Shown here piece by piece: positions 18,318 through 33,243 of a stretch of DNA of 64,000 nt. The first letter of the stretch is position 1, and each line of letters opens with the position of its first letter. This stretch comes from Schmidtea nova. Taxonomy: Eukaryota. The notes below the pieces were generated by a model. That model saw only the letters and a list, made by a program, of their open reading frames with translations, was not told the DNA's origin and ran no database searches. The stretch is taken from the NCBI GenBank assembly GCA_044892505.1, contig CM097882.1:473928001-473992000 (forward strand), read 5' to 3'. The position numbers and the translations under genes were made by a program.

Positions 18318-19366
18318 TGTTCGGTTCGTATCAGTGGTTTACGACGAACACAGAAATATATATATATATATGTTTTGATTTGATTTGATTTGATTATCGG
18401 ACTCCAAACGATAATCCGCTTATATAATTATAAATAAAATATATGTTTTAGGTTGGGTGTAAAGAAAAGAAAACCAATTCTTTTTAATAAGATTTATGGC
18501 GATTTATGTATAACAATGTACAATATAATAAAATAAAATAGCTGCAAAGCAAAAGTTAGAAAATCGGTTATTCAAACCGTCCTCAGAGTTTAAGAACGAA
18601 AGCTGGACCTAAAAGGCTCAACAGCTCCGACTAAATGAAAGGACAAAAGATGAGGGCTTTCCCGGTAGTTTAATCGCGATAGTGACAACCCAGAAATGGT
18701 TGTCACTGTGACCTAATAATTTCCCTTCTAATAATTTATTATTTAACGAATTTACTGAAGGGGAAAAATAGTAATATAACTATTTCCCCGTGATCGATTT
18801 ATAGAATTAAAGCAAACTAGAAAATTTACCAGCTAATAAAGATTATTCCAATTTCGGGAAATTATCACAAATGAAATTCAAGCTAAACTTCTCGTAATAC
18901 TTCTGCCGTAAAAATTAATTTCTCCAATTCACAAATCTGTAAAACTTAGATTCTAAAATTCACTTCTGTAAAATTTATGTTCTGCCTCGACTGATTTGAC
19001 AATCAGTTTATATACAAATTATTTTCTCTCATGTAGGTCTAGACGACCACCTATTACTAACTACGTGTAGGTCGAAATTGACCTTACAAAATATTAACTT
19101 TTAAAGTAATTTATTATTACTATATATATCTTATTATTACTATTTAAATTTCTCATGTATTTATTTATTACTATATTTATTATATACTATTTAATTATTA
19201 CTATATTTATTATATGCTATTTAATTATTACTATATTTAATCTATATTTATTTATAGTAATTATTTATTTATTTTTAGTATTTTTTAATTGCTATTTCTA
19301 TTTATTTATTTACTTATAATATTTAATTACAAAAAACCCGAGATCCCTTGATCTCGAACCCTAACA
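18318..19366 (-). repeat. 3' LTR (1,049 bp)
   Basis: Matches 32195-33243 except at 18850/32727 and 19021/32898; minus-strand ends TGTTAGGG...CGAACA. Confidence 0.98.
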
Positions 19367-19368
19367 TG

Positions 19369-19378
19369 TCTTCCCCCT
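19369..19378 (-). promoter_or_regulatory. polypurine tract
   Basis: AGGGGGAAGA on the minus strand, 2 nt before the 3' LTR. Confidence 0.85.
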
Positions 19379-19680
19379 AACAAGATTTTCGTCCCGAAAA
19401 TTAAAGCGGAAAAAGACAAGAAGATGACGCAGCCAAAAATAAAAATAAAATAAAATAACAACACATGCATAAATATACATTGAATGCACTTGGTCAATAA
19501 AATAAAACAAAAATGAGTCTCATAAAACACACAATACATAAGTAATGTTAATCACAATCGATATCAAATAATAACTGTCTGTAAGCGTTAGATTGTTGAT
19601 CGCATAGCCGAAATGCTAATTGTTTGATTGATAGTTGTCATAGCTTATAGCTAGACCTTGGATTGAACGTAGCAGAAATG

Positions 19681-21837
19681 CTAGTTATCCTTTGCGAATA
19701 GGTTTTGAGCTGCTCTCTTGCGAATATGCGCTTGCTCGTTCTTGATGCGATCTTCCACTATATCTGGTCTATAACTGACCACCAATGTTTCGCGTGTTTC
19801 GACTTCCTTATATACCAAAGACGAAATCACGTATGATTTTCCGTTGGCCTCCAATACGCCATAGTAAGGGAAGTTTGAAACTGATGATTGGTGTACCGGT
19901 TTCCCGTCGTATTCTTTTATCCGAGGTACCCAATTTCTCTCTGGTCGCTGCCAAAAACTAGGGTCTTCATTGTCCAAATCCTGGGGTGTCTTTGCTGAAT
20001 TTCCCGTTCCAACGAAATCCCCTTCTCTTATAATAATAGGTTCGCCCTTAACCTCAGGAATCTGTTCCATATCGGGTGGAACGAATGCTGTTTCGATTAA
20101 ATCTTTGTCTTCCGTCGAGAGGAGATTTGGTACTTTCTTCTTGATCTTTAGATCTTGTAACCTTACAACAGGTTCTTGACTTTTCTTTGGGGGTGACTTT
20201 TCTACTGAAATCAATTTTTTAAAAGTCTTAGTAACTTTTTCCAAGAGCTTGTTCTCTTTCTTTGGTGGATTTTCTGGCACGATCTTTGTAATTGTACGGC
20301 TGTCTCCGTGTAAAGTTAAACGCATCTCTGTTTGCTCCTCACCCTCGCTTTCGCAGGTGGCGTAATCGTCTTCATCAGCTAAGGATATAGCTGGAGGGGA
20401 TAGTGATTCTTCCTCAACTATCTTTTGCAATTTGGTTGATAATGGTTGTTCCTGGGGTAAGCTCTCAATAGCTTTCCTTTTACTCGTTTCTTGTGGCTGT
20501 ATTGTATGAACCATTTTGACTTCTGATGTAATCGTCCCACTACGATTACCTGGGGTGATGTCATCTACCCAAACTTCTCTCAGTTTAAGGTAAATATTAC
20601 GTGTCGTTTCCACGTCATTTTCCGTTTTCAGATCTGAACGGTTTAGTTCTTCCTTTTCGAGAATTGACTTTGATAAATGCGCGAGTCGATAATGTCCGTT
20701 ACATTTCTTTAGTTCTCTCGCTTCCAGGCATTTTGCTGCTCCTAGTTCCCTAATGCCCAAAACTCGTTGAGGGTGTAACTGGACTGCTTCCAAGAAATCG
20801 TTGACTTGGAGACCTATTAGGATTTTCCCATCACATAATTTTCTAATACGGTCTGCGCAATCCTCTCCGTCAAATTGTCCGATGATTTCTTTTTCGGTCA
20901 TAGCATGCGGGTGCGATTGGTAATGTTTGACCTGGTTTCTGGGTGTAACCACCGTGTTTAGTATTAAATCACCACAGTAGTTTGCTATCAAAACAGCCAC
21001 CAAGGCTGGCTTTAAATAATCTCGCAAAGTTGCGTAATGCGCTGCAATAAATATTGACAATCTATCTTCTTGATTGGGGTGCAAATTCATCCGAACAAAG
21101 GATTTGAATGACTTGAGATCGTTCTCATTCACATTATAGGTCCAGGCAGGTTCATTTTTCCACAATGATTGCACTGCCTTGCTGGGTTCCAAAATCTCTA
21201 ATACCACAATAGTATTATATCCGTCACATTGGATGGAGATATTCTTTTCTCTGCCATCTCCGTTACTAATTTCTAGAGTTGATTCTGGTTGAAGTAGGAT
21301 AGGTCCTGTGGCTCCTGCCATGAAGATGGTAAAGGGTTTATTGATCGCGTGAATTAGGAGATGGTGAGTAAATGTTGATCTGTTAAATTCCGCCATGTGT
21401 TCAGTCAACCGGGTGTTCTCACGGCTGGTAATTGTGACTATGCACATTTGTCTCTTAGGCGATCCAAGAAACTTAAAATTGTTCGGGATGCCGGTGCAGT
21501 GCCCGTAATACCAATAGCGACGACCTTTCCGTGCTTCTGCGGATATCGCTTTTTCGATGTTTCGATAAATCAGTTTTTCCTTCTGTACTGTTTGCACATC
21601 GATAGTGCTATAACGCTGCTTGTATTGTGACACTTGATGCTTCATATCTGAAAGAAAAATAATTAACGTTAATATCAGATATACTGATATGCCAATATTG
21701 GCTAAAAAGAAATGCATAAATCTCGATTTACGGGATCTACTTATGCTGTAAGTTAATGCTACTCGGAGCTCAACAAGATTATAGATTTTAATATATATAT
21801 ATAAATACAAATATGCGATTTTATCTGTAATTGTCAT
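19681..21837 (-). CDS. ORF3 accessory protein (718 aa from ATG 21837, or 654 aa from ATG 21645): degenerate AlkB-like(?) region, degenerate DEDDh ISG20/REX4-like exonuclease, acidic/Lys-rich tail
   Basis: Intact long ORF inside the LTRs. PALVAVLIANYCGDLILNTVVTP...KLCDGKILIG...RLAHLSKSIL...TENDVETTRNIY aligns with REX4/ISG20 motifs. Confidence 0.75.
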   Translation of the reverse strand: MTITDKIAYLYLYIYIKIYNLVELRVALTYSISRSRKSRFMHFFLANIGISVYLILTLIIFLSDMKHQVSQYKQRYSTIDVQTVQKEKLIYRNIEKAISAEARKGRRYWYYGHCTGIPNNFKFLGSPKRQMCIVTITSRENTRLTEHMAEFNRSTFTHHLLIHAINKPFTIFMAGATGPILLQPESTLEISNGDGREKNISIQCDGYNTIVVLEILEPSKAVQSLWKNEPAWTYNVNENDLKSFKSFVRMNLHPNQEDRLSIFIAAHYATLRDYLKPALVAVLIANYCGDLILNTVVTPRNQVKHYQSHPHAMTEKEIIGQFDGEDCADRIRKLCDGKILIGLQVNDFLEAVQLHPQRVLGIRELGAAKCLEARELKKCNGHYRLAHLSKSILEKEELNRSDLKTENDVETTRNIYLKLREVWVDDITPGNRSGTITSEVKMVHTIQPQETSKRKAIESLPQEQPLSTKLQKIVEEESLSPPAISLADEDDYATCESEGEEQTEMRLTLHGDSRTITKIVPENPPKKENKLLEKVTKTFKKLISVEKSPPKKSQEPVVRLQDLKIKKKVPNLLSTEDKDLIETAFVPPDMEQIPEVKGEPIIIREGDFVGTGNSAKTPQDLDNEDPSFWQRPERNWVPRIKEYDGKPVHQSSVSNFPYYGVLEANGKSYVISSLVYKEVETRETLVVSYRPDIVEDRIKNEQAHIRKRAAQNLFAKDN

Positions 21838-22787
21838 AATCTCGTCATCATAATCCCATCAACCGACTCAATAGCCTGACTGAAGAATAATTTCATCCAA
21901 ACTCCCATTGCTATCAATGTAGTGATCATAGCTAATACTGCTGACGTAATAATCCATACCCCAACGGGTAATTTTCCCAAGTGAGTAATGGGGTTTACTT
22001 CATTAATTCCACACTGACAACTTTTAATATTGCTTTCTGTTGCTACTGTTGGTTTTACCATCTTCAATCCTTTCAATCTCTGCCATATGGCAGGATGAAT
22101 GACGTAACTCTCTTTCCGTATTAAGGATGTAACCGATTTCGTTGTCGTCGATGATTGAGGTAATTTCAAAGAGATTACTTCATAAAATACCTCATTCCAT
22201 TCATCGACTCCGAGCTTTTGTTTATTATTCATATAAGTGATATGAGCTTCCCACTCCACTGAACTGTTCCACTTGAGATTTTGTTTCTCAATATCTTCAT
22301 TTAGCCACAATTCTTGTACTATTTCCTTGTCGGAATGGATTTCTATCTTTACTCTATCCACTCCTTGTTTTGGTTGGCTGAAGGTAATCATACCTTGTTG
22401 GATATTTATCCTAACTTTCCTTTTGAAATCTGCTGTCTTCAGCTTCCATTGTGACTTTGAAAAATCTGACCATCGTCCAAACATAAAATGTTGTACAAGT
22501 ATATCTAATAAATATTCCTTTTCTGCTCGTAAGTCCTTTATGACTTTCACTCTTGTGTTTGAATCCAATGTAAAATGGAAACAACGTCGTTCACAAAACG
22601 AGAACTTGAATTTTGTATCATTTTCAGCTAATGATATTATCCTAAATTCCTGGAAAGATCTTCTGAATGCGAGATCTTGAATTTGTACCGCCGTTGGAAC
22701 AAATGTCTTTACACAGGATATAAGGCAACTTATTATTACCAAAAACGTAACTGATTTTGGCACGCCTCTTGATCGTAATGGATATCT
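21834..22787 (-). other. post-integrase type I membrane-protein module of unknown family
   Basis: RYPLRSR, then hydrophobic SVTFLVIISCLISCVKT (22704-22754), sequons NDT and NSS, and TM VGVWIITSAVLAMITTLIAMGVWMKLFF (21882-21965). Confidence 0.7.
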
Positions 22788-25700
22788 GTCTGAGACTGGT
22801 TCTGACCCTTTATCCTCTTTTTCCTTAATCGGATCTTTCTCCGTGACCGCAACTTTCTTGCATCTGTTAGCATGTACCATTATTGGTTCAGCTTTTCTAT
22901 TTGCTACTAATTGCAAGATTAAATTCGTGTCTGTGGTTCTCAAAACCTCATACGGTCCTTTGAAGTTTCTCATTAATTTTGGTGATAAGCCCTTTTTATT
23001 ATAATGGCTTTCCAACATCACCTTGTCTCCAACTAACATGCCATGTCCTTTGGCTTTCTTATCATGATAATCTTTCGATGCTTCCTGACTGAATTTTATA
23101 CTAAGACCTGCTTTTGTCCATGCTTCTTGCATTCTTTCTCTCATTTCCATGAGGTAATTTTCTTGGTCTAGATACTGTGTTGCTTTTGGGAAGAACAACA
23201 AATCTATAGGCATTTTACTTTGCCTTAAATACATGAGATAGAACGGCGTTTGTCCCGTACCCTCATGAACAGCATTTCTATATGCGAATAGGCATGATGG
23301 AATATGTATATCCCAATCCGTTTGCCCTGAATTTACGTATGATGCTAGCATATTTGCAAGCGTTCCGTTAAATCTCTCTACCAATCCGTCTGTTTGTGGA
23401 TGATACGGAGAGGTATTCAATTTTAAAATGTCGAAATAATCATTTATTCCTTTTAACAGATTACTCATGAAATCTGCTCCTCTATCTGTTAGTAGTTTTG
23501 TAGGTACTCCATACCTAAAAACGATTTGTTCTACAAAAATCCTGGCTATCGTATCTGCCTTGTGATTCGGTATCGGATAAGCCTCCGGCCATTTTGTCAG
23601 ATAATCGCAAAATACTAATATGTATTTGTTACCACTATTTGATTCTTTGAATGGCCCTAAAACATCCATTGCCGTCATTTCCATCGGTGTGGATGGTACT
23701 GGCATTGGTTTCATTGGCACATGCGGTTTCTTCCCCGTATTTCTCCTGGTGATACAGATCTTACATGACTGACACCATTCCTGTACGTCTGGTTTGATTG
23801 TCGGCCAGAAATATTTCTGCTTCAACCTTGACAATGTTTTCCTGAAAGACAAATGCCCTCCCAGTGCTCCATCATGATATTGTAACATCAAGGCTTCCCG
23901 ATATTTCTTAGGGACCATTATGACATTATCCCTTACATCCACATATTTGACTAATCCTTCTTCTAGGATAAATTTGTCTCGATTTTTCTCCCAATATTTA
24001 TTAAATTCCGTCGGTATGAACTTTGCTTCTAAAGCCTGTCTGATTTGGTTTATCTCTTCATCCGATTGTTGTGCTGCCATTAAATCCGCGAGTCTGTTTG
24101 CTTCTCTTGTAAGTGCGAAGATTGTTCCTTCTAATCTTCCTTCTTTGACATCTTCTGCTTCATCACCCTGGTCCATTCGAGAAAATGCATCTGCATTCCC
24201 ATTTTGATGTCCTTTTCGGTAATGTATTTCGATGTCGTACGGCTGCAAGATCAATGCCCATCTAACCAATTTTGATGTATCCATAGTATGCTTTGTTAAC
24301 CACTGTAATGGTCTATGATCCGTATACACAATGATCTTTCGACCCCATAAATATGTCCTGAATTGGTGTATAGCATACACAATTGCTAATGCTTCTAATT
24401 CGATAACTGCGTAATTCTTTTCGTGTGGTTTTAATCCTCTGCTAGCATACGCTATGGCATATTCGTCTCCTAGGTCATCTCTTTGACCTAACACAGCACC
24501 AATACCCCGAGTGCTGGCATCTGTCATGACCAAAAATTGTTTCTCAAAATCTGGAAACCGTAATATAGGAGGTTCCACGAGCATTCTCTTTAGCATAGCA
24601 AATGCTTCCTGTTGCTCTTTTCCCCAAACAAATTTGACATTTTTGCCCTCTAATTGTGTCAGAGGAAATGCTATTGCCGAAAAGTTCCTGATGAACTTCC
24701 TGTAATATCCCACTAAGCCCAAAAACCCTTTTATATGTTTGACTGTCTTTGGCTCTGGAAAATTCTTTGCTTTCTCAACATTTGCTGGATCTGGCTTTAC
24801 TCCATCCTTCGAGATAATGTGACCGACATAGACTACCTCTGATTCGGCCCATTTACATTTCGATGGTTTTACCTTAAGATTTGCATTAATTAACCTTTTG
24901 AATACGTCCTCTAAATGTTCTAAATGTTTTTCCAAATCTGGAGAAAATACTATGATATCATCTATGTATACCATTGCATGATGAACATCCATTAACATTA
25001 GATTCATGGCTCTTTGAAACGTTGCCGGCGCTCCTGTGAGACCAAATGGCATTACTGTATATTCGAAGTGTCCAAGGCTTGTAGAAAAAGCCGTAATTGG
25101 TATTGTCTCCTCTTTTAACTTGATTTGGTAAAATCCCTTCTGAGCATCCATCACTGAGAAATATTTTGAATTTCTCATGCGTCCGTAAATGTAATCCAAT
25201 AATGGTAATGGGTGACTATCCTTGCAAGTTGCTTCGTTTACCATTCGATAGTCGTTGCATAGTCGTACTGTTCCATCCTTTTTTGCCACTACTATCATTG
25301 GTGACTGGTATGGTGATTTACTATGCCTGATGATGTTATGTTTTAACATCAGTTTTACCTGCTTATCGACAGGTTCTTCCAAGCTAAACGGAATTCGATA
25401 CGGTCTCAGCTTTATTGGTTTAATATTGTTAAGAACAATTTCATGTTCCAACAAGTTCGTCTTTCCCAGATCATATTCGTGCTTGGCGAATACTTGATCA
25501 TATTTTCTTAACAACATGTTTACTTGAATATTCTCTCTTCGTGAAAGAGCTTTACTATTTGCCGTTGGCGCATCATAGTACTCGATGTCTGGTTCTCTAT
25601 TCTCTGCCTTCACTGTCAGGACAGATCCCCCAATCGGTAATTGATCCGACTTTGATACTCTCCCTACTCTTGTATCTGGGTACAATTTTAATGGTTTTAT

Positions 25701-25811
25701 ATCTAAATTGGCTACCCGAATTGGTATTCTGCCATTTTCAACTTTACCAACGCTATGCGTAATTGGTAGATTATATTTTGCTGAGAACCTTTCATCTGGT
25801 TCAAATACAAC
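21834..25811 (-). CDS. pol: Pol: RT - RNase H - integrase (HHCC, DDE, GPY/F) - signal peptide - ectodomain - TM; in frame with ORF1 after a TAA
   Basis: RT: DAQKGFYQI, PFGL, YIDD (24957-24968). RH: TDAS, ELEALA, TDHRPL. IN: HDGALGGH..CQSCKIC, MDVLGP, TDRGADF, VERFNGTL, FKGPY. The ORF track start at 25685 is a TTG within a frame that is open from 25811. Confidence 0.97.
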   Translation of the reverse strand, partial: VVFEPDERFSAKYNLPITHSVGKVENGRIPIRVANLDIKPLKLYPDTRVGRVSKSDQLPIGGSVLTVKAENREPDIEYYDAPTANSKALSRRENIQVNMLLRKYDQVFAKHEYDLGKTNLLEHEIVLNNIKPIKLRPYRIPFSLEEPVDKQVKLMLKHNIIRHSKSPYQSPMIVVAKKDGTVRLCNDYRMVNEATCKDSHPLPLLDYIYGRMRNSKYFSVMDAQKGFYQIKLKEETIPITAFSTSLGHFEYTVMPFGLTGAPATFQRAMNLMLMDVHHAMVYIDDIIVFSPDLEKHLEHLEDVFKRLINANLKVKPSKCKWAESEVVYVGHIISKDGVKPDPANVEKAKNFPEPKTVKHIKGFLGLVGYYRKFIRNFSAIAFPLTQLEGKNVKFVWGKEQQEAFAMLKRMLVEPPILRFPDFEKQFLVMTDASTRGIGAVLGQRDDLGDEYAIAYASRGLKPHEKNYAVIELEALAIVYAIHQFRTYLWGRKIIVYTDHRPLQWLTKHTMDTSKLVRWALILQPYDIEIHYRKGHQNGNADAFSRMDQGDEAEDVKEGRLEGTIFALTREANRLADLMAAQQSDEEINQIRQALEAKFIPTEFNKYWEKNRDKFILEEGLVKYVDVRDNVIMVPKKYREALMLQYHDGALGGHLSFRKTLSRLKQKYFWPTIKPDVQEWCQSCKICITRRNTGKKPHVPMKPMPVPSTPMEMTAMDVLGPFKESNSGNKYILVFCDYLTKWPEAYPIPNHKADTIARIFVEQIVFRYGVPTKLLTDRGADFMSNLLKGINDYFDILKLNTSPYHPQTDGLVERFNGTLANMLASYVNSGQTDWDIHIPSCLFAYRNAVHEGTGQTPFYLMYLRQSKMPIDLLFFPKATQYLDQENYLMEMRERMQEAWTKAGLSIKFSQEASKDYHDKKAKGHGMLVGDKVMLESHYNKKGLSPKLMRNFKGPYEVLRTTDTNLILQLVANRKAEPIMVHANRCKKVAVTEKDPIKEKEDKGSEPVSDRYPLRSRGVPKSVTFLVIISCLISCVKTFVPTAVQIQDLAFRRSFQEFRIISLAENDTKFKFSFCERRCFHFTLDSNTRVKVIKDLRAEKEYLLDILVQHFMFGRWSDFSKSQWKLKTADFKRKVRINIQQGMITFSQPKQGVDRVKIEIHSDKEIVQELWLNEDIEKQNLKWNSSVEWEAHITYMNNKQKLGVDEWNEVFYEVISLKLPQSSTTTKSVTSLIRKESYVIHPAIWQRLKGLKMVKPTVATESNIKSCQCGINEVNPITHLGKLPVGVWIITSAVLAMITTLIAMGVWMKLFFSQAIESVDGIMMTRL

Positions 25812-28800
25812 TTATCCTTCCCACTGTTTGCTAGTGGACACGAAACATACTGTTTCTGCTCTAGGTGGTATTATCATCGTATGGTCGATGAAAACTGTAT
25901 CATCATTATAAACTTTTCTTTTCTTACCGGTTGATCTAACTAACAATCCGGTAGCACAGTCAAATACGACTCCTTTTAATCTTCTTAAAAAATCCATTCC
26001 TAGTAGACATTCTACTGGACAAGTTCTCATGACTATAATATCATGACGAAATTCTTGGTCACATAGCTTGATGTTACAAGCTAGAGTACCGATAATATTC
26101 AATGATGTGCCTGTAGCACCTGTTAGCGAAACTCTAGAGGTTTCCATTGATTCCAATTCTTTTTGATTTAATAGCGTTGCCTCTATGATAGTGCCGTCTG
26201 CTCCTGAATCTATCACTGCATTAACTGTGTGTCTGTTTATTTTTATCTTTATCATGGGTTTCTTCTCCAAGTTCACCCCATTTGCCATCAAAATAGTAGC
26301 ATGCGTTATCCCGATGGTATTTGCTCTGAATTTCTCAGCCTCATCTTGTTCGGTATCACTCAATTTTGGATTATATTCCTTGAATTTAGCTTTTATTGCT
26401 TCTAACGACTCGATAGGATACAGTTTCCCTTCATTTTCTAACGATAATGATATGCTTTTACCTGTTTCTCGAGCATCTTTGTCGGGAATTTGTTGATGTT
26501 TAGAAATGTACATTTTGTTTCTTGGTATGGTTAAAGCATAACTTGGCTTGCCTTCTCCTGATGTCTTTTGAAACTCTGGCGATTCCCCTTTTGGCGCTGT
26601 TGGTAAGCTTCTAAGATACGGCAATTGCATATATCTTGGGCTTCTTTTCAATCTAGGCGATGTTGTATTGATTGCAAATTTCTGGTCTGCACTATCGTAT
26701 TCATCTTCTGAAATCATACTTTTGTCGAAAATCTGTTTTGTCGCTTCGTAAGGTGGTTGATAATCCCGATATTTCATTTTCCTTAATTGATGATTCGGTT
26801 TTTTATTGTAGTTTCTTTTTCGACTTCTACTTTGCCTCTGAACTGTATTAAGAGAGTCTCCATTACCTCCTCCTTCAGAATTGTTATCGTCCCGATAACT
26901 TGTATTACCCTCCATTTCGATTCCAATAATCTCGTGTTTTACCAAGCTTCTCTGTTTGATTGTCTTTATTTCTTTACGATGATGTTTAAACAATGCAAAT
27001 TCCGCACACATAGGACACAATCCTAGTATCAACTTCCAAGACCATCCACCGATTTTGAATATACTGTATGTGGAAATTAATTGTGTTATTATTAACTTTA
27101 GAATTACGAATATTGCATATATTCCTGAGCAGCCTGCCACGAAAATACCAAAATTGGTAAACCTTCCCCATATTTTCATCATCACATTTTTAGCTGCTTC
27201 TTTATAATGATCTGGACCAAATAATAAATTGTAATCTGGTCTCATTTCGCTTGCTTGGTAAATTGTTCTTATGATTTCAGTGATACCTCTTTCTCTTACT
27301 TGAGGAAATAGCAACGTCTGTCTTGCCTCCTCAATGTCTGCTGGAGTGTAAATTCCTCCTTGTGATAATTCATCGAGTGATTTAAATTCCATGTTTTCCT
27401 CGAGTTTCGTGACTTCCAATGTTTCCACCTTTCTATTAGATGGTTTTCTGTCCGGTAATGAGATCCATCTATCATTTACCTTGTATAACGGTGATATTGC
27501 TGGATTGCAAATTGAAGGTTGAGGCTTTTGTTTTTCATCCAAAAGTCTCCTCGTTACTGGCATTACAAATCGTATCTTGTTTTGATATGACACTGGTAAT
27601 TCTAGAGTACATTCGTTATACCGTGTTAATTGTACCTCTATGGGTTGACATTGATAGCTGTATATAGCTTCCCCCATAATTCTGCCAAACATTCCATCTT
27701 CTAGCAACATAGGTGTCACTAGATCCGGATTCACGATTGATATCGCTAATCGATTTCGAACTATTTCGCGATTTAGTTTGCAATCATTGAGTATTACTTC
27801 CTGATACATTTCCTGCATTTGTCCTTGCAGATCATGATATAAATAATCTATTTTATTATTTATATAGTTCGTGATTTTGATATCCTGGCTGTGAATATTC
27901 TTGGCTTTTTGGATAAATGTTTTTGACAAATATAATCCTTTATAGTTGGTCTCGTACACCACTTTTCCGCATTTTGTCTTCTTATCTTTTCTGACAAATC
28001 TGATTGCATCTTTCTTATCTTCTGATACTAATACTAGAGGTGTGATTTCCTCACTAATATCCTCTTTTTGCTGTTTGTTGATCCTTTTCAACGTCTTTTC
28101 TTTATCCCAAATTCTTTCTCTTTTGGGTAAATCTCGATACTTTGTCCCGTTCAACTTATGGAAATTAATTTTCTTTAGTAATGACAATTCGCAATGGTCT
28201 AGTATTTGATCGTATAATAATGTAATGACCCCTGTTCTGCAGCTTCCAAATTTCGCGAGGCACTGAGGGTGTGCCATTAATCTTCCTGATAATACATCGA
28301 ACGTCCCTTCGTATTCTCTTAATTCGATTGAATAGTCCTCGATATCTACGACAAAACTTACCAACTCCGATCCGCGAGTTTTCTTTCTTCCCGTACAGGT
28401 ACCATCTGATCCAATTGATCCTCCTCTTGTAATGGTTACTCCCAGTGTTTTCCCTACTTCCGCGGCGATGGTTACCTCGTTATCGATTCTTAAAGTACCT
28501 TTTCGAAAGGCATCTAGACAATCTTCTGGCAATATGTTAACTGGTCTAGGTATTAGAGTGGCTGATAGAAAAGCTGTATAGCTGTGTGAACCACAATAAT
28601 ATTCAAACGTTGCTCTTTGGACTCTACATTCTCTTATCTTAGTTCTGAAGAATTCACTTTCTTGGTAAACATAGTATTCGACCTTTTCTCCTGTTTGGAC
28701 TTTCTCTGGGTATGCCTCTTTGCACTCAATTGCATCCACGAGCGAATATATCCGAGCCAACTTTGGATCACTGCAATCAAACGCTGTCATTGTGTTTGTC

Positions 28801-31800
28801 TGTTTCATTATCCCCATCATTACTAAAAACATTAATATCATATTTGTCATATTCCCCATTCCTCCATTTCCGAGGTGGTTGTTATTCATAGCCTCTTCCA
28901 CAAATTCATATCGTGGTTTATGTTTCTCCTCTTCCCAGAAGTTATTTTCACTCATCCACGTTCCGAGATAATGCTCCGTTATCTCCGTGATCTGGTCTAT
29001 TTCTCGATTAATAAGTTTCTTCTCATTGCCTGCGCGGGCTAAGGCATCTTGAATCAACATAGATAATGCTGTCACTATTTTTCCTTTAGATAACCCATCT
29101 TGTATGAGTGTCTCTAACATACTCTGTATCTCGTTTTGAGGTACCCCTTTAGGTAATCTCCTCATCGTCTTCGCGATTGACTGTGTCACTTTATCCACTT
29201 GAATTCCTTTAATCCGAGTGATCTGCCATTCCGGCTTTAATATTCCTATGATCTGTTTGATTCTCTTCCATGTCAGAGATTTTTCTGGTATATGTACACC
29301 CTCGTCTCTCATATCAACATCCCTGGCTATTCCTGACAGGGTTTTCATCTGAACCTGTTTAATGGTTTCTTGGTTTAATTGCTCCGTGGGTGGAGGTTTC
29401 ATTTGATCTTTCCTAGGCCTTCCTCGCCTATCTTTCTTTGTCTGCCATGCTGGCCTGACAGTTTCTACCGCCTGAGAAGTTGAAGCACCCACGTTAGTTT
29501 CCTCATTATTGCGCCTGATTTCCTCTTCTCCGTGATTATCGGCATCGATATCTACATTAAGTGGTTGTGTCTCAACGTTACCAATGACCATTTCATCTGG
29601 TAATCGTAATGCTGACCATTGAGATTCAGGTGGCTCTACGGGAATGATTGCTACCGTTGTAGTTTCAAATGGTAGACATCCCACATCTACTAAATATTCA
29701 TCATCATCCACTTGCCCTCCATGAATCATAATCAAGAATATACCAGTAGTCTGCCCAGTATCTATTAAATCCTTTCTCAACGTTATCACTTTGCTAAAAC
29801 AACGATATAACCTCGTCATGGGTTCTTTTCCCGATATTCGAATGTCTAAAGTTATCATGCCTTGTCGGTGTGCTTGATGACGTATTGCTGTTCCATTTTT
29901 TCTCATTAACATTTTTATTTCTGTTTGAAAAGAACTAGTTTCTTTTACTACAGGTAGTAATATAGGAATTATACTCTCCAATGATTCTACTGGTATGCGC
30001 AATACCAACATCCAGTCTAATATTTCCTTGATTGTTTCTCCATCCCTCGGAGATTTCTGCAACTCTATCTTCAGACGTTGCTCTATTTGTTGAACTTCCT
30101 CCAACTGTGCGATTTCCATCTGTGTGAGTAGAAACACACTGTCTTGATCCACTACTGGGACCGATATTCCTGTCAGTTTCGTTGTGAGTTTCGTTACCTT
30201 TCCTGGTAATACACCATTTTGTAGTAGTGTTTCTCCAACTACTAACTTTTCTCCATATAAGTAAAAATCATATCTATTATGTTTCAATTTCATCATTGTA
30301 TCTGACAACTTGTCTGTTCGACATCTTACATTCATGTCGATGTTAAACTCCTGCTCCTGAGGAAGTTTTATGTTTAAATGCGAATCCTGAAGATCCCATT
30401 CATGTTCCATTGCTGTTCCTATCTTTCGTAGGATTTTGTGTATGTCGTTATGATACCTTGGATCATCTTCGACCTGAGATATTAACTGTAATATCTTTCC
30501 AATTTCACTATTCTTGATCTCACCTTGTGATAATTTCTCTAATTCTCTAGTCAGTCTCTGCTGATACTCATATCTGGAATCCACCAGTTTTAAACATTTT
30601 GCTAGGGTATCTGACCCTTTCTTGGCCTTTGTTTCCTTGAACAAAGCCTGGTCGAACTCGCTCAGTATGGTACTCATACTGGGTTCGTCATCATTATCAG
30701 AATTTGTTTCTGATTCTATTACCTCCTGATTCTCGCTGCTGGAATCCATGGGTTCACTATTACCTTGCTCATCTGTGTAAGCATCATGATTTTTCTCAGC
30801 TGAAATCATCAAAACTGTTCCTTGCCCAACTGTGTGAGCATCATCGCTTTCCTCAATGGGATTCATTATAACTGTTCCTCGCCCATCCATGTGAGCATGA
30901 TTTTTCTCAGCTGAAATCATAAAAACTGTCTCTTGCCCAACTGTGTGAGTCTCATTTATTTCTTCAATTGTATTCATCAAAACTGTTCCTCGCTCATCTG
31001 TGTGAGCATGATTTTTCTCAGCTGAAATCATAAAAACTGTATCATCTCGATCCATTAGCCGTGCTAATCGATTTTTCTCCTCCTGGATTTCCATTTCCAG
31101 TTGTTGCAAATACGTCAATTCTTTATCGTGATTGACCATGAACGTAGTTTTTGGCTTGCTGATATTACCACCATTGGTAGTCCTATTATTCGTATTATTA
31201 CTCTGATTTTGAGGACACGACCTCAGTATATGCCCGAATTTTCCACATCCGTGACATTTTATCTTTCCTGATGAATTAACATCATCCCTTTTAATATTAA
31301 AATTCCCATTCGTGGGGAGATTCTTAACTCTACAAACGGAAGCCACATGCCCTCTGCGTTTGCATTTATCACACTGCAAGTTCGTGACTCTACAGTTCTC
31401 AACACTATGATTATTCATACCACATTTGGTACACTGAATACCCCTACGAGTATCAGCTACCTTCTTACTGTGGCAATCTTTTGATATGTGCCCTTTCTTA
31501 TGGCAGTTAAAACATTCAATGGCTGGCTTCTCATTATTTACCATAAATGATGTAGCCTTTTCTAAGCTGCTTTCGATTACGACAGCTTTTCTTGTTAATT
31601 CCCAAAAATCATCTCCCGTGTGGAGAATCAATGCATTTCTCATTACATTTGTGAATCCAGCTAATAATTGGTCTTTAACCATAGCTTTAGTTGCATCATT
31701 CCAGGTAGTTCTGAGCCCAAATGCTCTTTCTGCTAATAACAATAATTGATAGGAAAATTCTCCTACATGCTCATTGGCATTCTGTTTTCTATGGTAAAAC

Positions 31801-32102
31801 TGTTGTCGGAAAATTCTACTTGAATCTCCCGGTAATATTCTAGCTGTTAGTGATTCTCTCATCTTTTCCCATGTAGCTGGTTTATCTGCTGCTGGTAACG
31901 CCATAATATCATTGTAGTTTTCCCTTGCCATACCCTTAAGGTAAATTGGCAGTCTTTGTATCATTATTGCATCTGGATACCCATAGGCCTTTGCCATCTG
32001 ATAATACTCTGACATAAACTCCGGAAATTCCCCTGGATCTCCGCTAAATGCCTTGACAGGTAAAGCGGGATATCTAGCAAAAACATTATTCTCTTCAGCC
32101 AT
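25812..32102 (-). CDS. gag: Gag-Env-Pro polyprotein (2,096 aa from ATG 32102)
   Basis: Uninterrupted frame: capsid (FSGDPGEF..YLKGMA..TWEKMRESL..RKQNANEHVGEF), 4 CCHC knuckles, accessory region, glycoprotein, and protease DSG...LLGMDFL. Confidence 0.95.
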   Translation of the reverse strand: MAEENNVFARYPALPVKAFSGDPGEFPEFMSEYYQMAKAYGYPDAIMIQRLPIYLKGMARENYNDIMALPAADKPATWEKMRESLTARILPGDSSRIFRQQFYHRKQNANEHVGEFSYQLLLLAERAFGLRTTWNDATKAMVKDQLLAGFTNVMRNALILHTGDDFWELTRKAVVIESSLEKATSFMVNNEKPAIECFNCHKKGHISKDCHSKKVADTRRGIQCTKCGMNNHSVENCRVTNLQCDKCKRRGHVASVCRVKNLPTNGNFNIKRDDVNSSGKIKCHGCGKFGHILRSCPQNQSNNTNNRTTNGGNISKPKTTFMVNHDKELTYLQQLEMEIQEEKNRLARLMDRDDTVFMISAEKNHAHTDERGTVLMNTIEEINETHTVGQETVFMISAEKNHAHMDGRGTVIMNPIEESDDAHTVGQGTVLMISAEKNHDAYTDEQGNSEPMDSSSENQEVIESETNSDNDDEPSMSTILSEFDQALFKETKAKKGSDTLAKCLKLVDSRYEYQQRLTRELEKLSQGEIKNSEIGKILQLISQVEDDPRYHNDIHKILRKIGTAMEHEWDLQDSHLNIKLPQEQEFNIDMNVRCRTDKLSDTMMKLKHNRYDFYLYGEKLVVGETLLQNGVLPGKVTKLTTKLTGISVPVVDQDSVFLLTQMEIAQLEEVQQIEQRLKIELQKSPRDGETIKEILDWMLVLRIPVESLESIIPILLPVVKETSSFQTEIKMLMRKNGTAIRHQAHRQGMITLDIRISGKEPMTRLYRCFSKVITLRKDLIDTGQTTGIFLIMIHGGQVDDDEYLVDVGCLPFETTTVAIIPVEPPESQWSALRLPDEMVIGNVETQPLNVDIDADNHGEEEIRRNNEETNVGASTSQAVETVRPAWQTKKDRRGRPRKDQMKPPPTEQLNQETIKQVQMKTLSGIARDVDMRDEGVHIPEKSLTWKRIKQIIGILKPEWQITRIKGIQVDKVTQSIAKTMRRLPKGVPQNEIQSMLETLIQDGLSKGKIVTALSMLIQDALARAGNEKKLINREIDQITEITEHYLGTWMSENNFWEEEKHKPRYEFVEEAMNNNHLGNGGMGNMTNMILMFLVMMGIMKQTNTMTAFDCSDPKLARIYSLVDAIECKEAYPEKVQTGEKVEYYVYQESEFFRTKIRECRVQRATFEYYCGSHSYTAFLSATLIPRPVNILPEDCLDAFRKGTLRIDNEVTIAAEVGKTLGVTITRGGSIGSDGTCTGRKKTRGSELVSFVVDIEDYSIELREYEGTFDVLSGRLMAHPQCLAKFGSCRTGVITLLYDQILDHCELSLLKKINFHKLNGTKYRDLPKRERIWDKEKTLKRINKQQKEDISEEITPLVLVSEDKKDAIRFVRKDKKTKCGKVVYETNYKGLYLSKTFIQKAKNIHSQDIKITNYINNKIDYLYHDLQGQMQEMYQEVILNDCKLNREIVRNRLAISIVNPDLVTPMLLEDGMFGRIMGEAIYSYQCQPIEVQLTRYNECTLELPVSYQNKIRFVMPVTRRLLDEKQKPQPSICNPAISPLYKVNDRWISLPDRKPSNRKVETLEVTKLEENMEFKSLDELSQGGIYTPADIEEARQTLLFPQVRERGITEIIRTIYQASEMRPDYNLLFGPDHYKEAAKNVMMKIWGRFTNFGIFVAGCSGIYAIFVILKLIITQLISTYSIFKIGGWSWKLILGLCPMCAEFALFKHHRKEIKTIKQRSLVKHEIIGIEMEGNTSYRDDNNSEGGGNGDSLNTVQRQSRSRKRNYNKKPNHQLRKMKYRDYQPPYEATKQIFDKSMISEDEYDSADQKFAINTTSPRLKRSPRYMQLPYLRSLPTAPKGESPEFQKTSGEGKPSYALTIPRNKMYISKHQQIPDKDARETGKSISLSLENEGKLYPIESLEAIKAKFKEYNPKLSDTEQDEAEKFRANTIGITHATILMANGVNLEKKPMIKIKINRHTVNAVIDSGADGTIIEATLLNQKELESMETSRVSLTGATGTSLNIIGTLACNIKLCDQEFRHDIIVMRTCPVECLLGMDFLRRLKGVVFDCATGLLVRSTGKKRKVYNDDTVFIDHTMIIPPRAETVCFVSTSKQWEG
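25956..26260 (-). other. retropepsin aspartic protease domain
   Basis: AVIDSGADGTII (catalytic D at 26208-26210), flap TGATGTSL, CLLGMDFL. Confidence 0.95.
26988..28850 (-). other. env: envelope glycoprotein domain, chuvirus/Jingchuvirales G-like (class III-like fusogen), embedded in ORF1
   Basis: Signal-like MILMFLVMMGIM, then AFDC, YYCGSHS, GSIGSDGTCTG, CKLNREI, GEAIYSYQCQP, CTLELPV, GGIYTPADIE, LLFP; TM FGIFVAGCSGIYAIFVILKLII (27087-27153). Confidence 0.85.
29640..30563 (-). other. duplicated helical + ubiquitin-like module
   Basis: QRL..EL.K...(D/E)I..(I/L).RK.GTA occurs twice, each followed by a 72-73 aa segment matching the ubiquitin-fold pattern. Confidence 0.6.
30762..31040 (-). repeat. 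in-frame 111-bp (37-aa) tandem repeat x2.5 built from 18/19-aa subunits
   Basis: TVFMISAEKNHAH...TV(L/I)MN(T/P)IEE...HTVGQ repeated. Confidence 0.9.
31215..31514 (-). other. four CX2CX4HX4C zinc knuckles (nucleocapsid)
   Basis: CFNCHKKGHISKDC, CTKCGMNNHSVENC, CDKCKRRGHVASVC, CHGCGKFGHILRSC. Confidence 0.95.
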
Positions 32103-32173
32103 GTCCTCCACAACTTTTAACTTTTTAGGAGCTATTTTGTATATATGACAATATGCCCACTGATAATAATTGT

Positions 32174-32191
32174 ATCACGTCGGGCTCACCA
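32174..32191 (-). promoter_or_regulatory. primer-binding site, tRNA-Trp type
   Basis: TGGTGAGCCCGACGTGAT, 3 nt after the 5' LTR. Its complement ATCACGTCGGGCTCACCA differs at one base from the animal tRNA-Trp 3' end as I recall it (ATCACGTCGGGGTCACCA). Confidence 0.85.
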
Positions 32192-32194
32192 AAA

Positions 32195-33243
32195 TGTTCG
32201 GTTCGTATCAGTGGTTTACGACGAACACAGAAATATATATATATATATGTTTTGATTTGATTTGATTTGATTATCGGACTCCAAACGATAATCCGCTTAT
32301 ATAATTATAAATAAAATATATGTTTTAGGTTGGGTGTAAAGAAAAGAAAACCAATTCTTTTTAATAAGATTTATGGCGATTTATGTATAACAATGTACAA
32401 TATAATAAAATAAAATAGCTGCAAAGCAAAAGTTAGAAAATCGGTTATTCAAACCGTCCTCAGAGTTTAAGAACGAAAGCTGGACCTAAAAGGCTCAACA
32501 GCTCCGACTAAATGAAAGGACAAAAGATGAGGGCTTTCCCGGTAGTTTAATCGCGATAGTGACAACCCAGAAATGGTTGTCACTGTGACCTAATAATTTC
32601 CCTTCTAATAATTTATTATTTAACGAATTTACTGAAGGGGAAAAATAGTAATATAACTATTTCCCCGTGATCGATTTATAGAATTAAAGCAAACTAGAAA
32701 ATTTACCAGCTAATAAAGATTATTCCTATTTCGGGAAATTATCACAAATGAAATTCAAGCTAAACTTCTCGTAATACTTCTGCCGTAAAAATTAATTTCT
32801 CCAATTCACAAATCTGTAAAACTTAGATTCTAAAATTCACTTCTGTAAAATTTATGTTCTGCCTCGACTGATTTGACAATCAGTTTATATACAAATTCTT
32901 TTCTCTCATGTAGGTCTAGACGACCACCTATTACTAACTACGTGTAGGTCGAAATTGACCTTACAAAATATTAACTTTTAAAGTAATTTATTATTACTAT
33001 ATATATCTTATTATTACTATTTAAATTTCTCATGTATTTATTTATTACTATATTTATTATATACTATTTAATTATTACTATATTTATTATATGCTATTTA
33101 ATTATTACTATATTTAATCTATATTTATTTATAGTAATTATTTATTTATTTTTAGTATTTTTTAATTGCTATTTCTATTTATTTATTTACTTATAATATT
33201 TAATTACAAAAAACCCGAGATCCCTTGATCTCGAACCCTAACA
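32195..33243 (-). repeat. 5' LTR (1,049 bp)
   Basis: Direct repeat of 18318-19366, adjacent to the PBS. Confidence 0.98.

What the first reader, a model, noticed from the sequence alone, without database searches (positions are those of the whole stretch)
18318..33243. Gypsy element with its envelope glycoprotein embedded in frame between Gag and protease
Seen: one stop-free frame (32102-25815) runs capsid, 4 zinc knuckles, about 750 aa of accessory sequence, a hydrophobic signal-like stretch (28850-28791), an approximately 550-aa Cys-patterned ectodomain starting AFDC, a TM (27087-27153), a tail, and a DSG protease. RT-RH-IN follow in the same frame. Knowledge: env-bearing Metaviridae/errantiviruses and BEL/Pao elements normally place env after pol. 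The AFDC / YYCGxHS / DGxCxG / ELPV / GIY..FP pattern matches my recollection of chuvirus (Jingchuvirales) glycoproteins, which BEL/Pao 'Anakin' elements are known to have captured. Inference: this is an enveloped retrovirus-like element using a flavivirus/alphavirus-style membrane-threaded polyprotein, with Gag cytosolic, signal peptidase releasing a luminal fusogen, and PR-RT-IN back in the cytosol. I know of no described gag-env-pro-pol order.
Basis: partly seen in the sequence, partly recalled or inferred. Interest (0 to 1): 0.95.

Follow-up and report, generated by a model that had tools for sequence, protein, structure and literature searches.

The report
Gypsy-type retrovirus, envelope gene inside polyprotein
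This is a young, nearly intact 14.9-kb Ty3/gypsy endogenous retrovirus whose chuvirus-like fusion glycoprotein sits in frame between Gag and protease; that layout is the rule in a whole lineage and its gene order is already published, so it is a good new example, not a new kind.

Summary
The element lies on the minus strand, 18318-33243. It has 1049-bp TG..CA LTRs with 2 mismatches, a 4-bp GCTA target duplication, a primer-binding site (PBS) and a polypurine tract (PPT).

One frame of 3,426 codons reads Gag (four zinc knuckles), about 770 aa of post-NC sequence, an internal signal-like stretch, a roughly 540-aa ectodomain, a TM, a 260-aa linker, a DSG protease, RT, RNase H and IN. It holds one internal stop.

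The ectodomain matches Pfam Monjiviricetes_fusion (E 2e-90). Its model matches herpesvirus gB (class III) and, best of all, chuvirus glycoproteins.

It is not a one-off. At least 12 diverged relatives (28-47% identity) keep Env directly upstream of protease; in most, Env and protease share one ORF.

The novelty claim fails. GAG-ENV-POL gB-type gypsy elements are published for nematodes, bryozoans and flatworms.

The membrane-threaded polyprotein model fits the conserved topology, but it is inferred, not shown.

The parts
18314..18317 (.). Target-site duplication, left copy (GCTA)
   Evidence: Read directly from the flanks.
33244..33247 (.). Target-site duplication, right copy (GCTA)
   Evidence: Read directly from the flanks.
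32195..33243 (-). 5' LTR, 1049 bp, TG..CA ends
   Evidence: Direct repeat with 2 mismatches to the other LTR.
18318..19366 (-). 3' LTR, 1049 bp
32174..32191 (-). Primer-binding site, starts TGG, 3 nt inside the 5' LTR
   Evidence: Sequence read. The tRNA was not identified; there is no tRNA gene in the window.
19367..19378 (-). Polypurine tract abutting the 3' LTR
   Evidence: Sequence read.
21837..32102 (-). gag-env-pro-pol reading frame, 3,426 codons counted from the upstream GTG. It has 1 internal in-frame stop, 0 frameshifts and no large insertion or deletion against its closest full-length relative.
   Evidence: collinear alignment with P0001.
31173..32102 (-). Gag: capsid-like N-terminal part plus nucleocapsid with four CCHC knuckles (knuckles at 31194-31517)
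   Evidence: zf-CCHC E 7e-8 and weak Retrotrans_gag E 0.02. HIV NC hits E 5e-6. 40% identity to the N-terminus of P0001.
30728..31043 (-). Three tandem 111-nt (37-aa) repeats inside the post-NC region
   Evidence: translation.
29538..30077 (-). Conserved post-NC block of unknown fold. In relative L004 it lies inside the separate gag ORF.
   Evidence: BLASTP to P0001, P0003, P0010 and the L004 gag, L005 and L006 ORFs. The AF2 model failed.
28791..28850 (-). Internal signal-like hydrophobic stretch, followed by a short c-region with small residues before AFDC
   Evidence: Translation. The same feature sits at the same place in 13 relatives.
27162..28784 (-). Env ectodomain, a chuvirus-type class III fusion glycoprotein. 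It has 14 Cys and keeps all 13 near-invariant family cysteines.
   Evidence: PF24664 E 2.4e-90. Alignment A2. AF2 pLDDT 86. Foldseek gB E 3e-15. Chuvirus G E 1e-38.
27057..27161 (-). Stop-transfer or membrane anchor stretch of Env (35 hydrophobic residues)
   Evidence: Kyte-Doolittle scan. Modelled as part of one continuous helix.
26268..27056 (-). Env tail to protease linker. It carries PTAP (26592-26603) and YPx3L (26403-26420).
   Evidence: YPx(1-3)L recurs 21-77 aa before PR (121 aa for a second copy in one relative) in 7 of 11 relatives; 0 of 20,000 shuffles reach that.
25971..26267 (-). Aspartic protease (DSG active site)
   Evidence: RVP E 2e-12 and gag-asp_proteas E 2e-12.
24813..25286 (-). 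Reverse transcriptase
   Evidence: RVT_1 E 2e-33.
24237..24626 (-). RNase H (Ty3/gypsy type)
   Evidence: RT_RNaseH E 2e-37 and RT_RNaseH_2 E 3e-34.
23349..23915 (-). Integrase (H2C2 finger plus core). A GPY/F-type C-terminal part follows.
   Evidence: Integrase_H2C2 E 3e-19 and rve E 3e-8; sequence.
21837..22766 (-). Post-integrase membrane module: signal-like stretch, about 230-aa domain, TM, then a 14-aa tail
   Evidence: The same layout follows IN in P0001, P0002, P0007, P0016, P0152 and P0156. Sequence conservation is poor (A3). No Pfam hit.
19684..21837 (-). ORF3 (718 aa; the conserved part starts at the Met at 21645). It derives from an ISG20/SDN-type DEDDh exonuclease, and the catalytic residues are absent in this copy.
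   Evidence: Homologous to the 3' ORFs of L001 and L002. RNase_T in L002 and L004. The family profile hits ISG20L2 at E 3e-13.

Best explanation
**What it is.** This is a recently inserted member of a lineage of Ty3/gypsy (Metaviridae) endogenous retroviruses with the non-canonical order gag-env-pro-pol. The env is a class III fusion glycoprotein of the chuvirus (Jingchuvirales/Monjiviricetes) type.

**How it most likely works (inferred).**
- Env is not a separate gene. It is translated as an internal segment of the Gag-Env-PR(-RT-RH-IN) polyprotein.
- Gag and the post-NC region stay in the cytosol.
- An internal signal sequence inserts the chain into the ER membrane, and the ectodomain folds and forms disulfides in the lumen.
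- The anchor returns the chain to the cytosol, where the linker, protease, RT, RNase H and integrase lie.
- After integrase, a second signal+TM pair puts a small domain into the lumen.
- Host signal peptidase would free the Env N-terminus. The element's protease would cut the cytosolic junctions.
- The linker carries late-domain-like motifs, P(T/S)AP and YPx(n)L. The Tyr-Pro could equally be a protease site.

**Shown:** the identity of the parts, the fold, and the conserved architecture and hydrophobic pattern.

**Inferred:** translation through the junctions, membrane threading, and the cleavages.
For: **Identity.**
- LTRs, TSD, PBS and PPT are present.
- The Pfam set is Ty3/gypsy.
- PF24664 scores E 2.4e-90.
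- The AF2 model has pLDDT 86.
- Foldseek matches herpesvirus gB at E 3e-15 over about 630 columns. It matches chuvirus and chu-like glycoproteins at E 1e-38, with TM-score up to 0.70.

**Architecture is conserved.**
- The closest 15 or so Env relatives among 1.84 billion representatives are mostly embedded in long ORFs. Free-standing G proteins of about 650 aa appear mainly below 30% identity.
- P0001, P0002, P0003, P0004, P0005, P0007, P0013, P0016, P0017, P0152 and the L006 ORF have Env followed in frame by PR. L005 has the same order, but there Env and PR are adjacent separate ORFs.
- The window aligns to P0001 without a break from 100 aa before the signal through the anchor. The junction therefore predates their divergence (Pol 56% identical).
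- GC content is even across the element.

**Topology.**
- A signal-like stretch sits right before the ectodomain, and a hydrophobic anchor right after it, in nearly all relatives.
- A second such pair follows IN in seven proteins. The number of passes is even, which keeps every enzyme cytosolic.
- Six of 14 relatives have no Met in the 45 aa before the ectodomain ahead of the hydrophobic core. Env there cannot start at its own AUG.
- Small residues lie 4-7 aa before the conserved [AG][YF]DC.
- All near-invariant cysteines of the family are kept.
- YPx(1-3)L occurs in the linker of 7 of 11 relatives; no shuffle out of 20,000 reaches that.
Against: - There are no transcript or protein data, so translation through the junctions is not shown.
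- In some relatives Gag is a separate ORF in another frame (L004, L005). Only the Env-to-PR fusion is the near-constant feature, not the Gag-to-Env fusion.
- In the window and in P0003 the signal-like stretch is Met-rich and only weakly hydrophobic on the Kyte-Doolittle scale.
- The 35-aa hydrophobic stretch could in principle be a hairpin. No dedicated topology predictor was at hand.
- The ectodomain has a single N-x-S/T sequon, so glycosylation sites give no support.
- A polyprotein gives equimolar Gag, Env and PR, which is unusual for retroviruses.
- This copy has one internal stop, so it may not make Pol at all.
Confidence: 0.6

Rival explanations
1. The identity of the parts is the same, but expression is retrovirus-like. 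Env would be made from a spliced subgenomic mRNA. Either an AUG just before the signal starts translation, or a splice brings the gag AUG in frame. Gag-PR-Pol would be made from an RNA from which env is spliced out. The shared frame would then be a by-product.
For: - The window has a cluster of Met codons right at the signal-like stretch. P0001, P0006 and P0013 have an M-x-R/K start typical of N-terminal signal peptides.
- Gag is a separate ORF in L004 and L005.
- Several relatives' ORFs begin only 125-190 aa before the signal.
- Errantiviruses and retroviruses express env from spliced RNA (established knowledge).
Against: - No stop codon closes env before PR in 11 diverged proteins. A separately translated env would be expected to keep one.
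- Six of 14 relatives have no Met ahead of the hydrophobic core within 45 aa.
- The alignment is continuous across the Gag-to-Env junction between the window and P0001.
- The even number of hydrophobic passes, including the post-IN pair, matters only if the chain is threaded as one.
Confidence: 0.3
2. The element and its relatives are decaying fossils. The long fused frame has no function; an ancestral env stop was simply lost.
For: This copy has one internal stop. Its ORF3 lacks the catalytic residues of its exonuclease relatives. L005 is split into several ORFs.
Against: - Open frames of about 2,100 and 1,280 codons at 37% GC cannot persist by chance.
- The LTRs are 99.8% identical and the TSD is intact.
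- The same fusion is kept at 28-47% identity in many lineages, with the family cysteines and enzyme motifs intact.
Confidence: 0.06
3. The block is a one-off insertion of a chuvirus-derived endogenous viral element into an ordinary gypsy copy, or an assembly chimera.
For: Chuvirus glycoprotein EVEs often lie next to gypsy fragments in insects (PMC10084718).
Against: - Relatives from independent assemblies share the block at the same place.
- GC content shows no step across the element.
- The frame is continuous on both sides.
- The nearest Pol relatives also carry env upstream.
Confidence: 0.02

Closest known systems
Non-canonical GAG-ENV-POL Ty3/gypsy 'errantiviruses' with HSV/gB-type env: nematode elements of Sacco et al. 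2022 (J Gen Virol, doi 10.1099/jgv.0.001739, not held here) and the bryozoan and flatworm elements of Chary & Hayashi 2026 (PMC13524379)
   Same: The backbone is Ty3/gypsy, the env is class III (gB-like) and was taken from an RNA virus, and env lies between gag and pol (for the papers; here).
   Different: - The host of the window is unknown, and I could not place its Pol in their tree.
- The text I could read treats ENV as an ORF and says nothing of an in-frame polyprotein, internal signal sequences, a post-integrase membrane module or an exonuclease-derived ORF3.
- My own unverified memory is that the Sacco abstract speaks of a continuous gag-env-pro-pol ORF with a Nyamiviridae/Chuviridae-like env. 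If so, the fused frame itself is also already described.
Anakin (mosquito BEL/Pao elements with a chuvirus glycoprotein; Dezordi et al. 2020, PMC7642597)
   Same: A chuvirus-type glycoprotein has been captured by an LTR retroelement and lies between the LTRs.
   Different: - Anakin is BEL/Pao, whereas this element is Ty3/gypsy.
- The paper's text says env-bearing BEL/Pao elements place env downstream of the polyprotein. I could not see the figure that shows Anakin's own order.
- Env identity to the free-standing insect glycoproteins is only 22-28%.
Insect errantiviruses (gypsy, ZAM and others) and the hymenopteran gB-type gypsy elements
   Same: They are Ty3/gypsy elements with an envelope gene and a 4-bp TSD. 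Some carry a gB or chuvirus-like env (PMC13524379).
   Different: Their order is GAG-POL-ENV with env as a separate 3' ORF, and most carry an F-type env. Here env is upstream of protease, in frame, and the 3' ORF is not an env.
Polytopic polyproteins of flaviviruses, hepaciviruses and pestiviruses (a functional analogy only; established knowledge)
   Same: A cytosolic capsid part is followed by an internal signal sequence, luminal glycoprotein(s), stop-transfer anchors and then cytosolic enzymes including the viral protease. Cleavage is shared between host signal peptidase and the viral protease.
   Different: There is no homology. Those are RNA viruses with class II fusogens or E1/E2 and serine proteases. 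For this element, threading is inferred from hydrophobic patterns alone.
Bdelloid rotifer LTR retrotransposons with enzymatic ORF3s (Rodriguez, Kenefick & Arkhipova 2017, PMC5408684)
   Same: They are LTR elements carrying a 3' ORF derived from a 3'-5' exonuclease of the DEDD superfamily.
   Different: Theirs is DEDDy (RNase D-like). Here the family profile matches DEDDh ISG20/ISG20L2/SDN1, and the window copy lacks the catalytic residues.

Membership tests
Ty3/gypsy (Metaviridae) LTR retroelement | LTRs with TG..CA ends, short TSD, PBS and PPT | tested here: met
   1049-bp LTRs with 2 mismatches, a 4-bp TSD (GCTA), a TGG-initiated PBS and a purine tract.
Ty3/gypsy (Metaviridae) LTR retroelement | Pol order PR-RT-RH-IN with gypsy-type RNase H and an H2C2 integrase | tested here: met
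   RVP, RVT_1, RT_RNaseH, RT_RNaseH_2, Integrase_H2C2 and rve occur in that order. Named Pol hits are Ty3/gypsy polyproteins.
Ty3/gypsy (Metaviridae) LTR retroelement | RT groups with Ty3/gypsy in a phylogeny | not tested
   No reference RT set was at hand. The only evidence is the Pfam signature and best hits.
BEL/Pao (Belpaoviridae), including Anakin | BEL/Pao-type protease and RT (Pfam Peptidase_A17 and associated DUFs) | tested here: not met
   None of these families appears at E <= 0.01 in any of the three ORFs.
Monjiviricetes/Jingchuvirales fusion glycoprotein (PF24664) | Sequence match above the curated Pfam threshold | tested here: met
   303.8 bits against a cut-off of 27, E 2.4e-90.
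Monjiviricetes/Jingchuvirales fusion glycoprotein (PF24664) | Class III fusogen fold | tested here: met
   AF2 pLDDT 86. Foldseek probability 1.00 to herpesvirus gB. Best viral hits are chuvirus and chu-like G, E 1e-38.
Monjiviricetes/Jingchuvirales fusion glycoprotein (PF24664) | Type I layout: signal sequence, ectodomain with conserved cysteines, C-terminal anchor | tested here: met
   Hydropathy. All 13 near-invariant Cys are present. No dedicated signal or TM predictor was available.
Monjiviricetes/Jingchuvirales fusion glycoprotein (PF24664) | Membrane fusion activity | not testable with these tools
Non-canonical GAG-ENV-POL gB-type errantiviruses (Sacco 2022; Chary & Hayashi 2026) | env between gag and pol on a Ty3/gypsy backbone | tested here: met
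   Domain order; the papers' description.
Non-canonical GAG-ENV-POL gB-type errantiviruses (Sacco 2022; Chary & Hayashi 2026) | HSV/gB-type (class III) env | tested here: met
Non-canonical GAG-ENV-POL gB-type errantiviruses (Sacco 2022; Chary & Hayashi 2026) | Pol falls in one of their clades; host is a nematode, bryozoan or flatworm | not testable with these tools
   Their sequences are not held. The host of the window and of the ENA contigs is unknown.
Insect errantivirus (genus-level sense) | GAG-POL-ENV order with a separate 3' env ORF | tested here: not met
   Env lies upstream of PR, and the 3' ORF is exonuclease-derived.

The most novel reading that the evidence does not exclude
A whole lineage of reverse-transcribing elements may make its envelope protein as an internal, co-translationally threaded segment of one polytopic Gag-Env-PR-RT-RH-IN-(small membrane protein) precursor. 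Host signal peptidase would do the luminal cuts. This is an expression strategy known from flavivirus-like RNA viruses and, to my knowledge, never demonstrated for any retroelement. Late-domain-like motifs would then sit on the Env tail rather than on Gag.
Probability: 0.5. Interest if true: 0.8.

Novelty: new member of a known kind. Interest (0 to 1): 0.5.

Why it matters
The element is an unusually complete specimen of the little-studied gag-env-pro-pol gypsy retroviruses. It has both LTRs, a TSD and almost fully open frames.

The relatives found here show that Env-in-frame-with-protease is the lineage's rule, not an accident. That turns an open question into a concrete, testable one: how can a retroelement express an envelope protein from inside its polyprotein?

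It also bears on how retrotransposons turn into viruses by capturing fusogens from negative-strand RNA viruses.

For annotation, these elements are easily missed by pipelines that expect GAG-POL-ENV. They also surface as 'bacterial' proteins in MAGs.

Tried and rejected
**Searches and models that gave nothing.**
- A sequence search of the PDB with Env gave nothing useful. Only the fold search worked.
- The AF2 model of the conserved post-NC block failed, with a 4-sequence alignment and pLDDT 37, so no fold search was run on it.
- Pfam gave no hit on the post-NC region, the post-IN module or ORF3.
- The third word-indexed protein search, with Env alone, gave one unnamed fragment.
- Scans of viral contigs and metagenome contigs with Env gave no relative.

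**Host identification failed.**
- Exact look-ups of the window's ORF1 and ORF3 found no record.
- Rfam and tRNA scans were empty.
- The other ORFs in the window are only transposon remnants.
- The ENA sample codes appear in no paper.
- All close relatives come from unnamed metagenome assemblies.

**Other dead ends.**
- No LTR pairs were found on the relatives' contigs, so the window copy is the only complete element seen.
- Sequon density does not separate luminal from cytosolic parts.
- Sacco et al. 2022 could not be read, by PubMed id or by DOI. No held paper uses 'gag-env-pro-pol'.

**Rejected readings.** BEL/Pao or Anakin membership was rejected for lack of BEL/Pao families. One-off insertion was rejected by the relatives. 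ORF3 as a second env was rejected because it is exonuclease-derived and its relatives have no TM.

- My first two notes and the printed output hold ORF bounds and the sequence context next to the internal stop. I wrote them before I treated that stop as a possible break.
- In my reasoning I once recalled a tRNA sequence from memory while guessing the PBS.
- Consensus lines printed by the alignment tool were not used.

- The N runs were left alone.
- No contig looked human.

Full report
**1. What is in the sequence**

The finding's coordinates bound a complete LTR retroelement on the minus strand.
- Two 1049-bp LTRs lie at 18318-19366 and 32195-33243. They differ at 2 positions and start TG and end CA.
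- A 4-bp target-site duplication, GCTA, flanks them.
- A TGG-initiated primer-binding site lies 3 nt inside the 5' LTR, and a purine tract abuts the 3' LTR.
- The host DNA around it is AT-rich (29% GC) and the element is 37% GC. There is no compositional step inside the element.

From the ATG at 32102, one frame runs 3,426 codons with a single internal stop and no frameshift. A third ORF of 718 codons follows in another frame, at 19684-21837. Open frames of this length at this base composition cannot be chance.

**2. The domains**

Pfam gives the following:
- zinc knuckles; four CX2CX4HX4C are visible in the translation;
- a weak Retrotrans_gag signal (E 0.02);
- Monjiviricetes_fusion, PF24664, at E 2.4e-90;
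- retroviral aspartic protease (DSG);
- RVT_1, RT_RNaseH and RT_RNaseH_2, Integrase_H2C2 and rve.

No BEL/Pao family appears. This is the Ty3/gypsy signature.

About 770 residues lie between the last knuckle and the signal. They hold three 37-aa tandem repeats and one block conserved in relatives (29538-30077). In relative L004 that block lies inside the separate gag ORF, so it belongs with Gag. Its fold could not be modelled.

**3. The glycoprotein**

With a 50-sequence alignment (A2), AlphaFold2 gave a confident model (pLDDT 86).
- Foldseek against the PDB returns herpesvirus gB in many entries, at E down to 3e-15 and probability 1.00 over about 630 columns.
- Against predicted viral structures, the best hits are glycoproteins of chuviruses and chu-like viruses, at E about 1e-38 and TM-score up to 0.70. 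They include Tacheng tick virus 4, soybean thrips chu-like virus 4, dermapteran chu-related virus 142 and Wenling crustacean virus 14.
- All 13 near-invariant cysteines of the family are present.

**4. Is the position an accident?**

No. A search of 1.84 billion representatives with the Env segment found 1,445 relatives. The closest ones (28-43% identity) are mostly parts of long ORFs. Free-standing glycoproteins of about 650 aa appear mainly below 30% identity; they include annotated ones in a beetle and a parasitoid wasp.

Pfam maps of the long proteins:

| Protein or locus | Domain order |
|---|---|
| P0001 (3,181 aa) | zf-CCHC, Env, PR, RT, RH, IN in one ORF |
| P0007, P0016, P0017 | N-terminal part, Env, PR, RT, RH, IN |
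| P0002 | Env, PR, PR, RT, RH, IN |
| P0003 | zf-CCHC, Env, several PR |
| P0013 | Retrotrans_gag, Env, PR, PR |
| P0004, P0005 | Env, PR, PR |
| P0152 (4,844 aa) | Env, C2H2 finger, PR, ankyrin, PR, RT, RH, IN and more |

Contigs L003-L006 show the same order.
- L006 has a 2,713-aa Gag-Env-PR ORF.
- L004 has Gag as a separate ORF in another frame.
- L005 has the same order split into several ORFs, with Env and PR in adjacent separate ORFs.

The nearest Pol relatives of the window (about 50% identity) sit on those same env-bearing contigs. I found no env-less sister. The window aligns to P0001 without a break from 100 residues before the signal to the anchor, so the junction is ancestral to both. 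The near-constant feature of the lineage is Env fused in frame to protease. Gag is in the same frame in a subset that includes the window.

**5. Topology**

A hydropathy scan shows a hydrophobic stretch 10-25 residues before the ectodomain in nearly every relative, and a hydrophobic anchor right after it.

In the window the anchor is one 35-residue stretch, and the model makes it part of one continuous helix. That argues for a single pass.

A signal-like stretch and a TM enclose 230-340 residues after integrase in the window (21837-22766) and in P0001, P0002, P0007, P0016, P0152 and P0156. Sequence conservation there is poor (12-20%).

With four membrane segments, the chain would run as follows: Gag cytosolic, Env luminal, PR-RT-RH-IN cytosolic, the small domain luminal, and a short cytosolic tail. 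This is self-consistent.

The 45 residues before the ectodomain show two things.
- Small residues lie 4-7 positions before the conserved [AG][YF]DC. That fits signal peptidase (the von Heijne -3/-1 rule, established knowledge).
- Six of 14 relatives have no Met ahead of the hydrophobic core. Env there cannot start at its own AUG.

**6. The Env tail to protease linker**

- YPx(1-3)L occurs in the linker of 7 of 11 relatives, mostly 21-77 residues before PR. Shuffled linkers average 1.2, and none of 20,000 shuffles reaches 7. The relatives are not independent, so this shows conservation, not a probability.
- P(T/S)AP lies about 30-60 residues upstream of it in the window, P0001 and P0008.
- This pair recalls retroviral late domains (established knowledge).
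- Tyr-Pro is also a classical retroviral protease cleavage dipeptide, so the motif may be the site that frees PR.

I cannot tell which reading is right.

**7. The internal stop**

The gag-env-pro-pol gene has one break: 1 stop, 0 frameshifts, and no large indel against P0001. It separates a Gag-Env-PR part from an RT-RH-IN part.

Six relatives are continuous there. L003 and L006 have an ORF boundary elsewhere, among their PR repeats.

Given the LTR divergence, a private nonsense mutation is quite possible (inference; about 0.4). Lineage-specific termination or read-through is not excluded. Only other copies from the same genome can settle it.

**8. ORF3**

ORF3 is homologous to the 3' ORFs of L001 and L002 (28% and 24% identity).
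- The L002 and L004 ORFs match Pfam RNase_T.
- A profile of the three sequences hits ISG20L2 (E 3e-13), ISG20 and the small-RNA-degrading nuclease SDN1 in the PDB.
- The L002 ORF keeps the DEDDh motifs. The window and L001 copies lack them.

DEDDy exonuclease ORF3s are known in rotifer LTR elements (PMC5408684). A role against small-RNA silencing is a guess.

**9. What is known**

- Dezordi et al. 2020 (PMC7642597) described Anakin, a BEL/Pao element with a chuvirus glycoprotein.
- Dezordi et al. 2023 (PMC10084718) saw gypsy fragments next to such glycoproteins but found no clear capture by gypsy.
- Chary & Hayashi 2026 (PMC13524379) report 114 gypsy elements with this glycoprotein in Coleoptera, Hymenoptera, Polyneoptera and Hexanauplia.
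- They also report GAG-ENV-POL elements with gB-type env in Nematoda, Bryozoa and Platyhelminthes, and ENV-GAG-POL elements in oribatid mites.
- They cite Sacco et al. [quoted passage not shown]
- Their insect pipeline required GAG-POL-ENV, and they did not look for other orders in insects.
- Neither version of their text mentions a fused frame, polyprotein, frameshift or splicing.
- I could not read Sacco et al.. My unverified memory is that its abstract describes a continuous gag-env-pro-pol ORF with a Nyamiviridae/Chuviridae-like env.

So the gene order and the env type are known, and the fused frame is probably known too. I found no description of the post-integrase membrane module, the linker motifs, the ISG20-type ORF3 or the breadth of the lineage in metagenome assemblies. 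I cannot exclude that such a description exists.

**10. Verdict**

It is a new member of a known kind, with interest 0.5.

The host is unknown. The published hosts of this gene order (nematodes, bryozoans, flatworms) are candidates, but nothing here tests that.

Noticed in passing
window 21837-22766 (-): A signal-like stretch, a domain of about 230 aa and a TM are fused to the C-terminus of integrase. The same layout is seen in six relatives, but sequence conservation is very poor and there is no family hit.
   Followed up: partly
window 19684-21837 (-); L002 9547-11622; L004 21702-22841: The 3' ORF of the lineage derives from an ISG20/SDN-type DEDDh exonuclease. The motifs are intact in L002 and absent in the window and L001 copies.
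   Followed up: partly
window 26403-26420 and 26592-26603 (-): YPx3L and PTAP lie in the Env tail to protease linker. YPx(1-3)L recurs at this place across the lineage. It may be a late-domain-like motif or a Tyr-Pro protease site.
   Followed up: partly
window 30728-31043 (-): Three tandem 111-nt repeats encode 37-aa units inside the post-NC region of the polyprotein.
   Followed up: no
L003 1544-13814; L004 6512-21046; L006 1130-14898: Relatives carry up to six protease-like repeats, ankyrin repeats, a C2H2 finger and, in L004, a RING-finger ORF. One ORF reaches 4,844 aa, which is very large for an LTR retroelement.
   Followed up: partly
P0007 (NCBI HBK71150.1) and P0159: Members of this eukaryotic retroelement lineage are filed in public databases as proteins of bacterial MAGs (Flavobacteriaceae, Turicibacter). 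This is evidently contamination of the bins.
   Followed up: no
window 42405-43153 (-): A remnant of a mariner/Mos1-type transposase (Transposase_1, HTH_48), split over two ORFs.
   Followed up: no
window 57930-58337 (+): A fragment of a protein-primed type B DNA polymerase (DNA_pol_B_2), as found in Maverick/Polinton-like elements.
   Followed up: no
window 50957-51671 (-): A degraded reverse-transcriptase fragment of another retroelement (30-39% identity to the element's RT).
   Followed up: no
   Followed up: no
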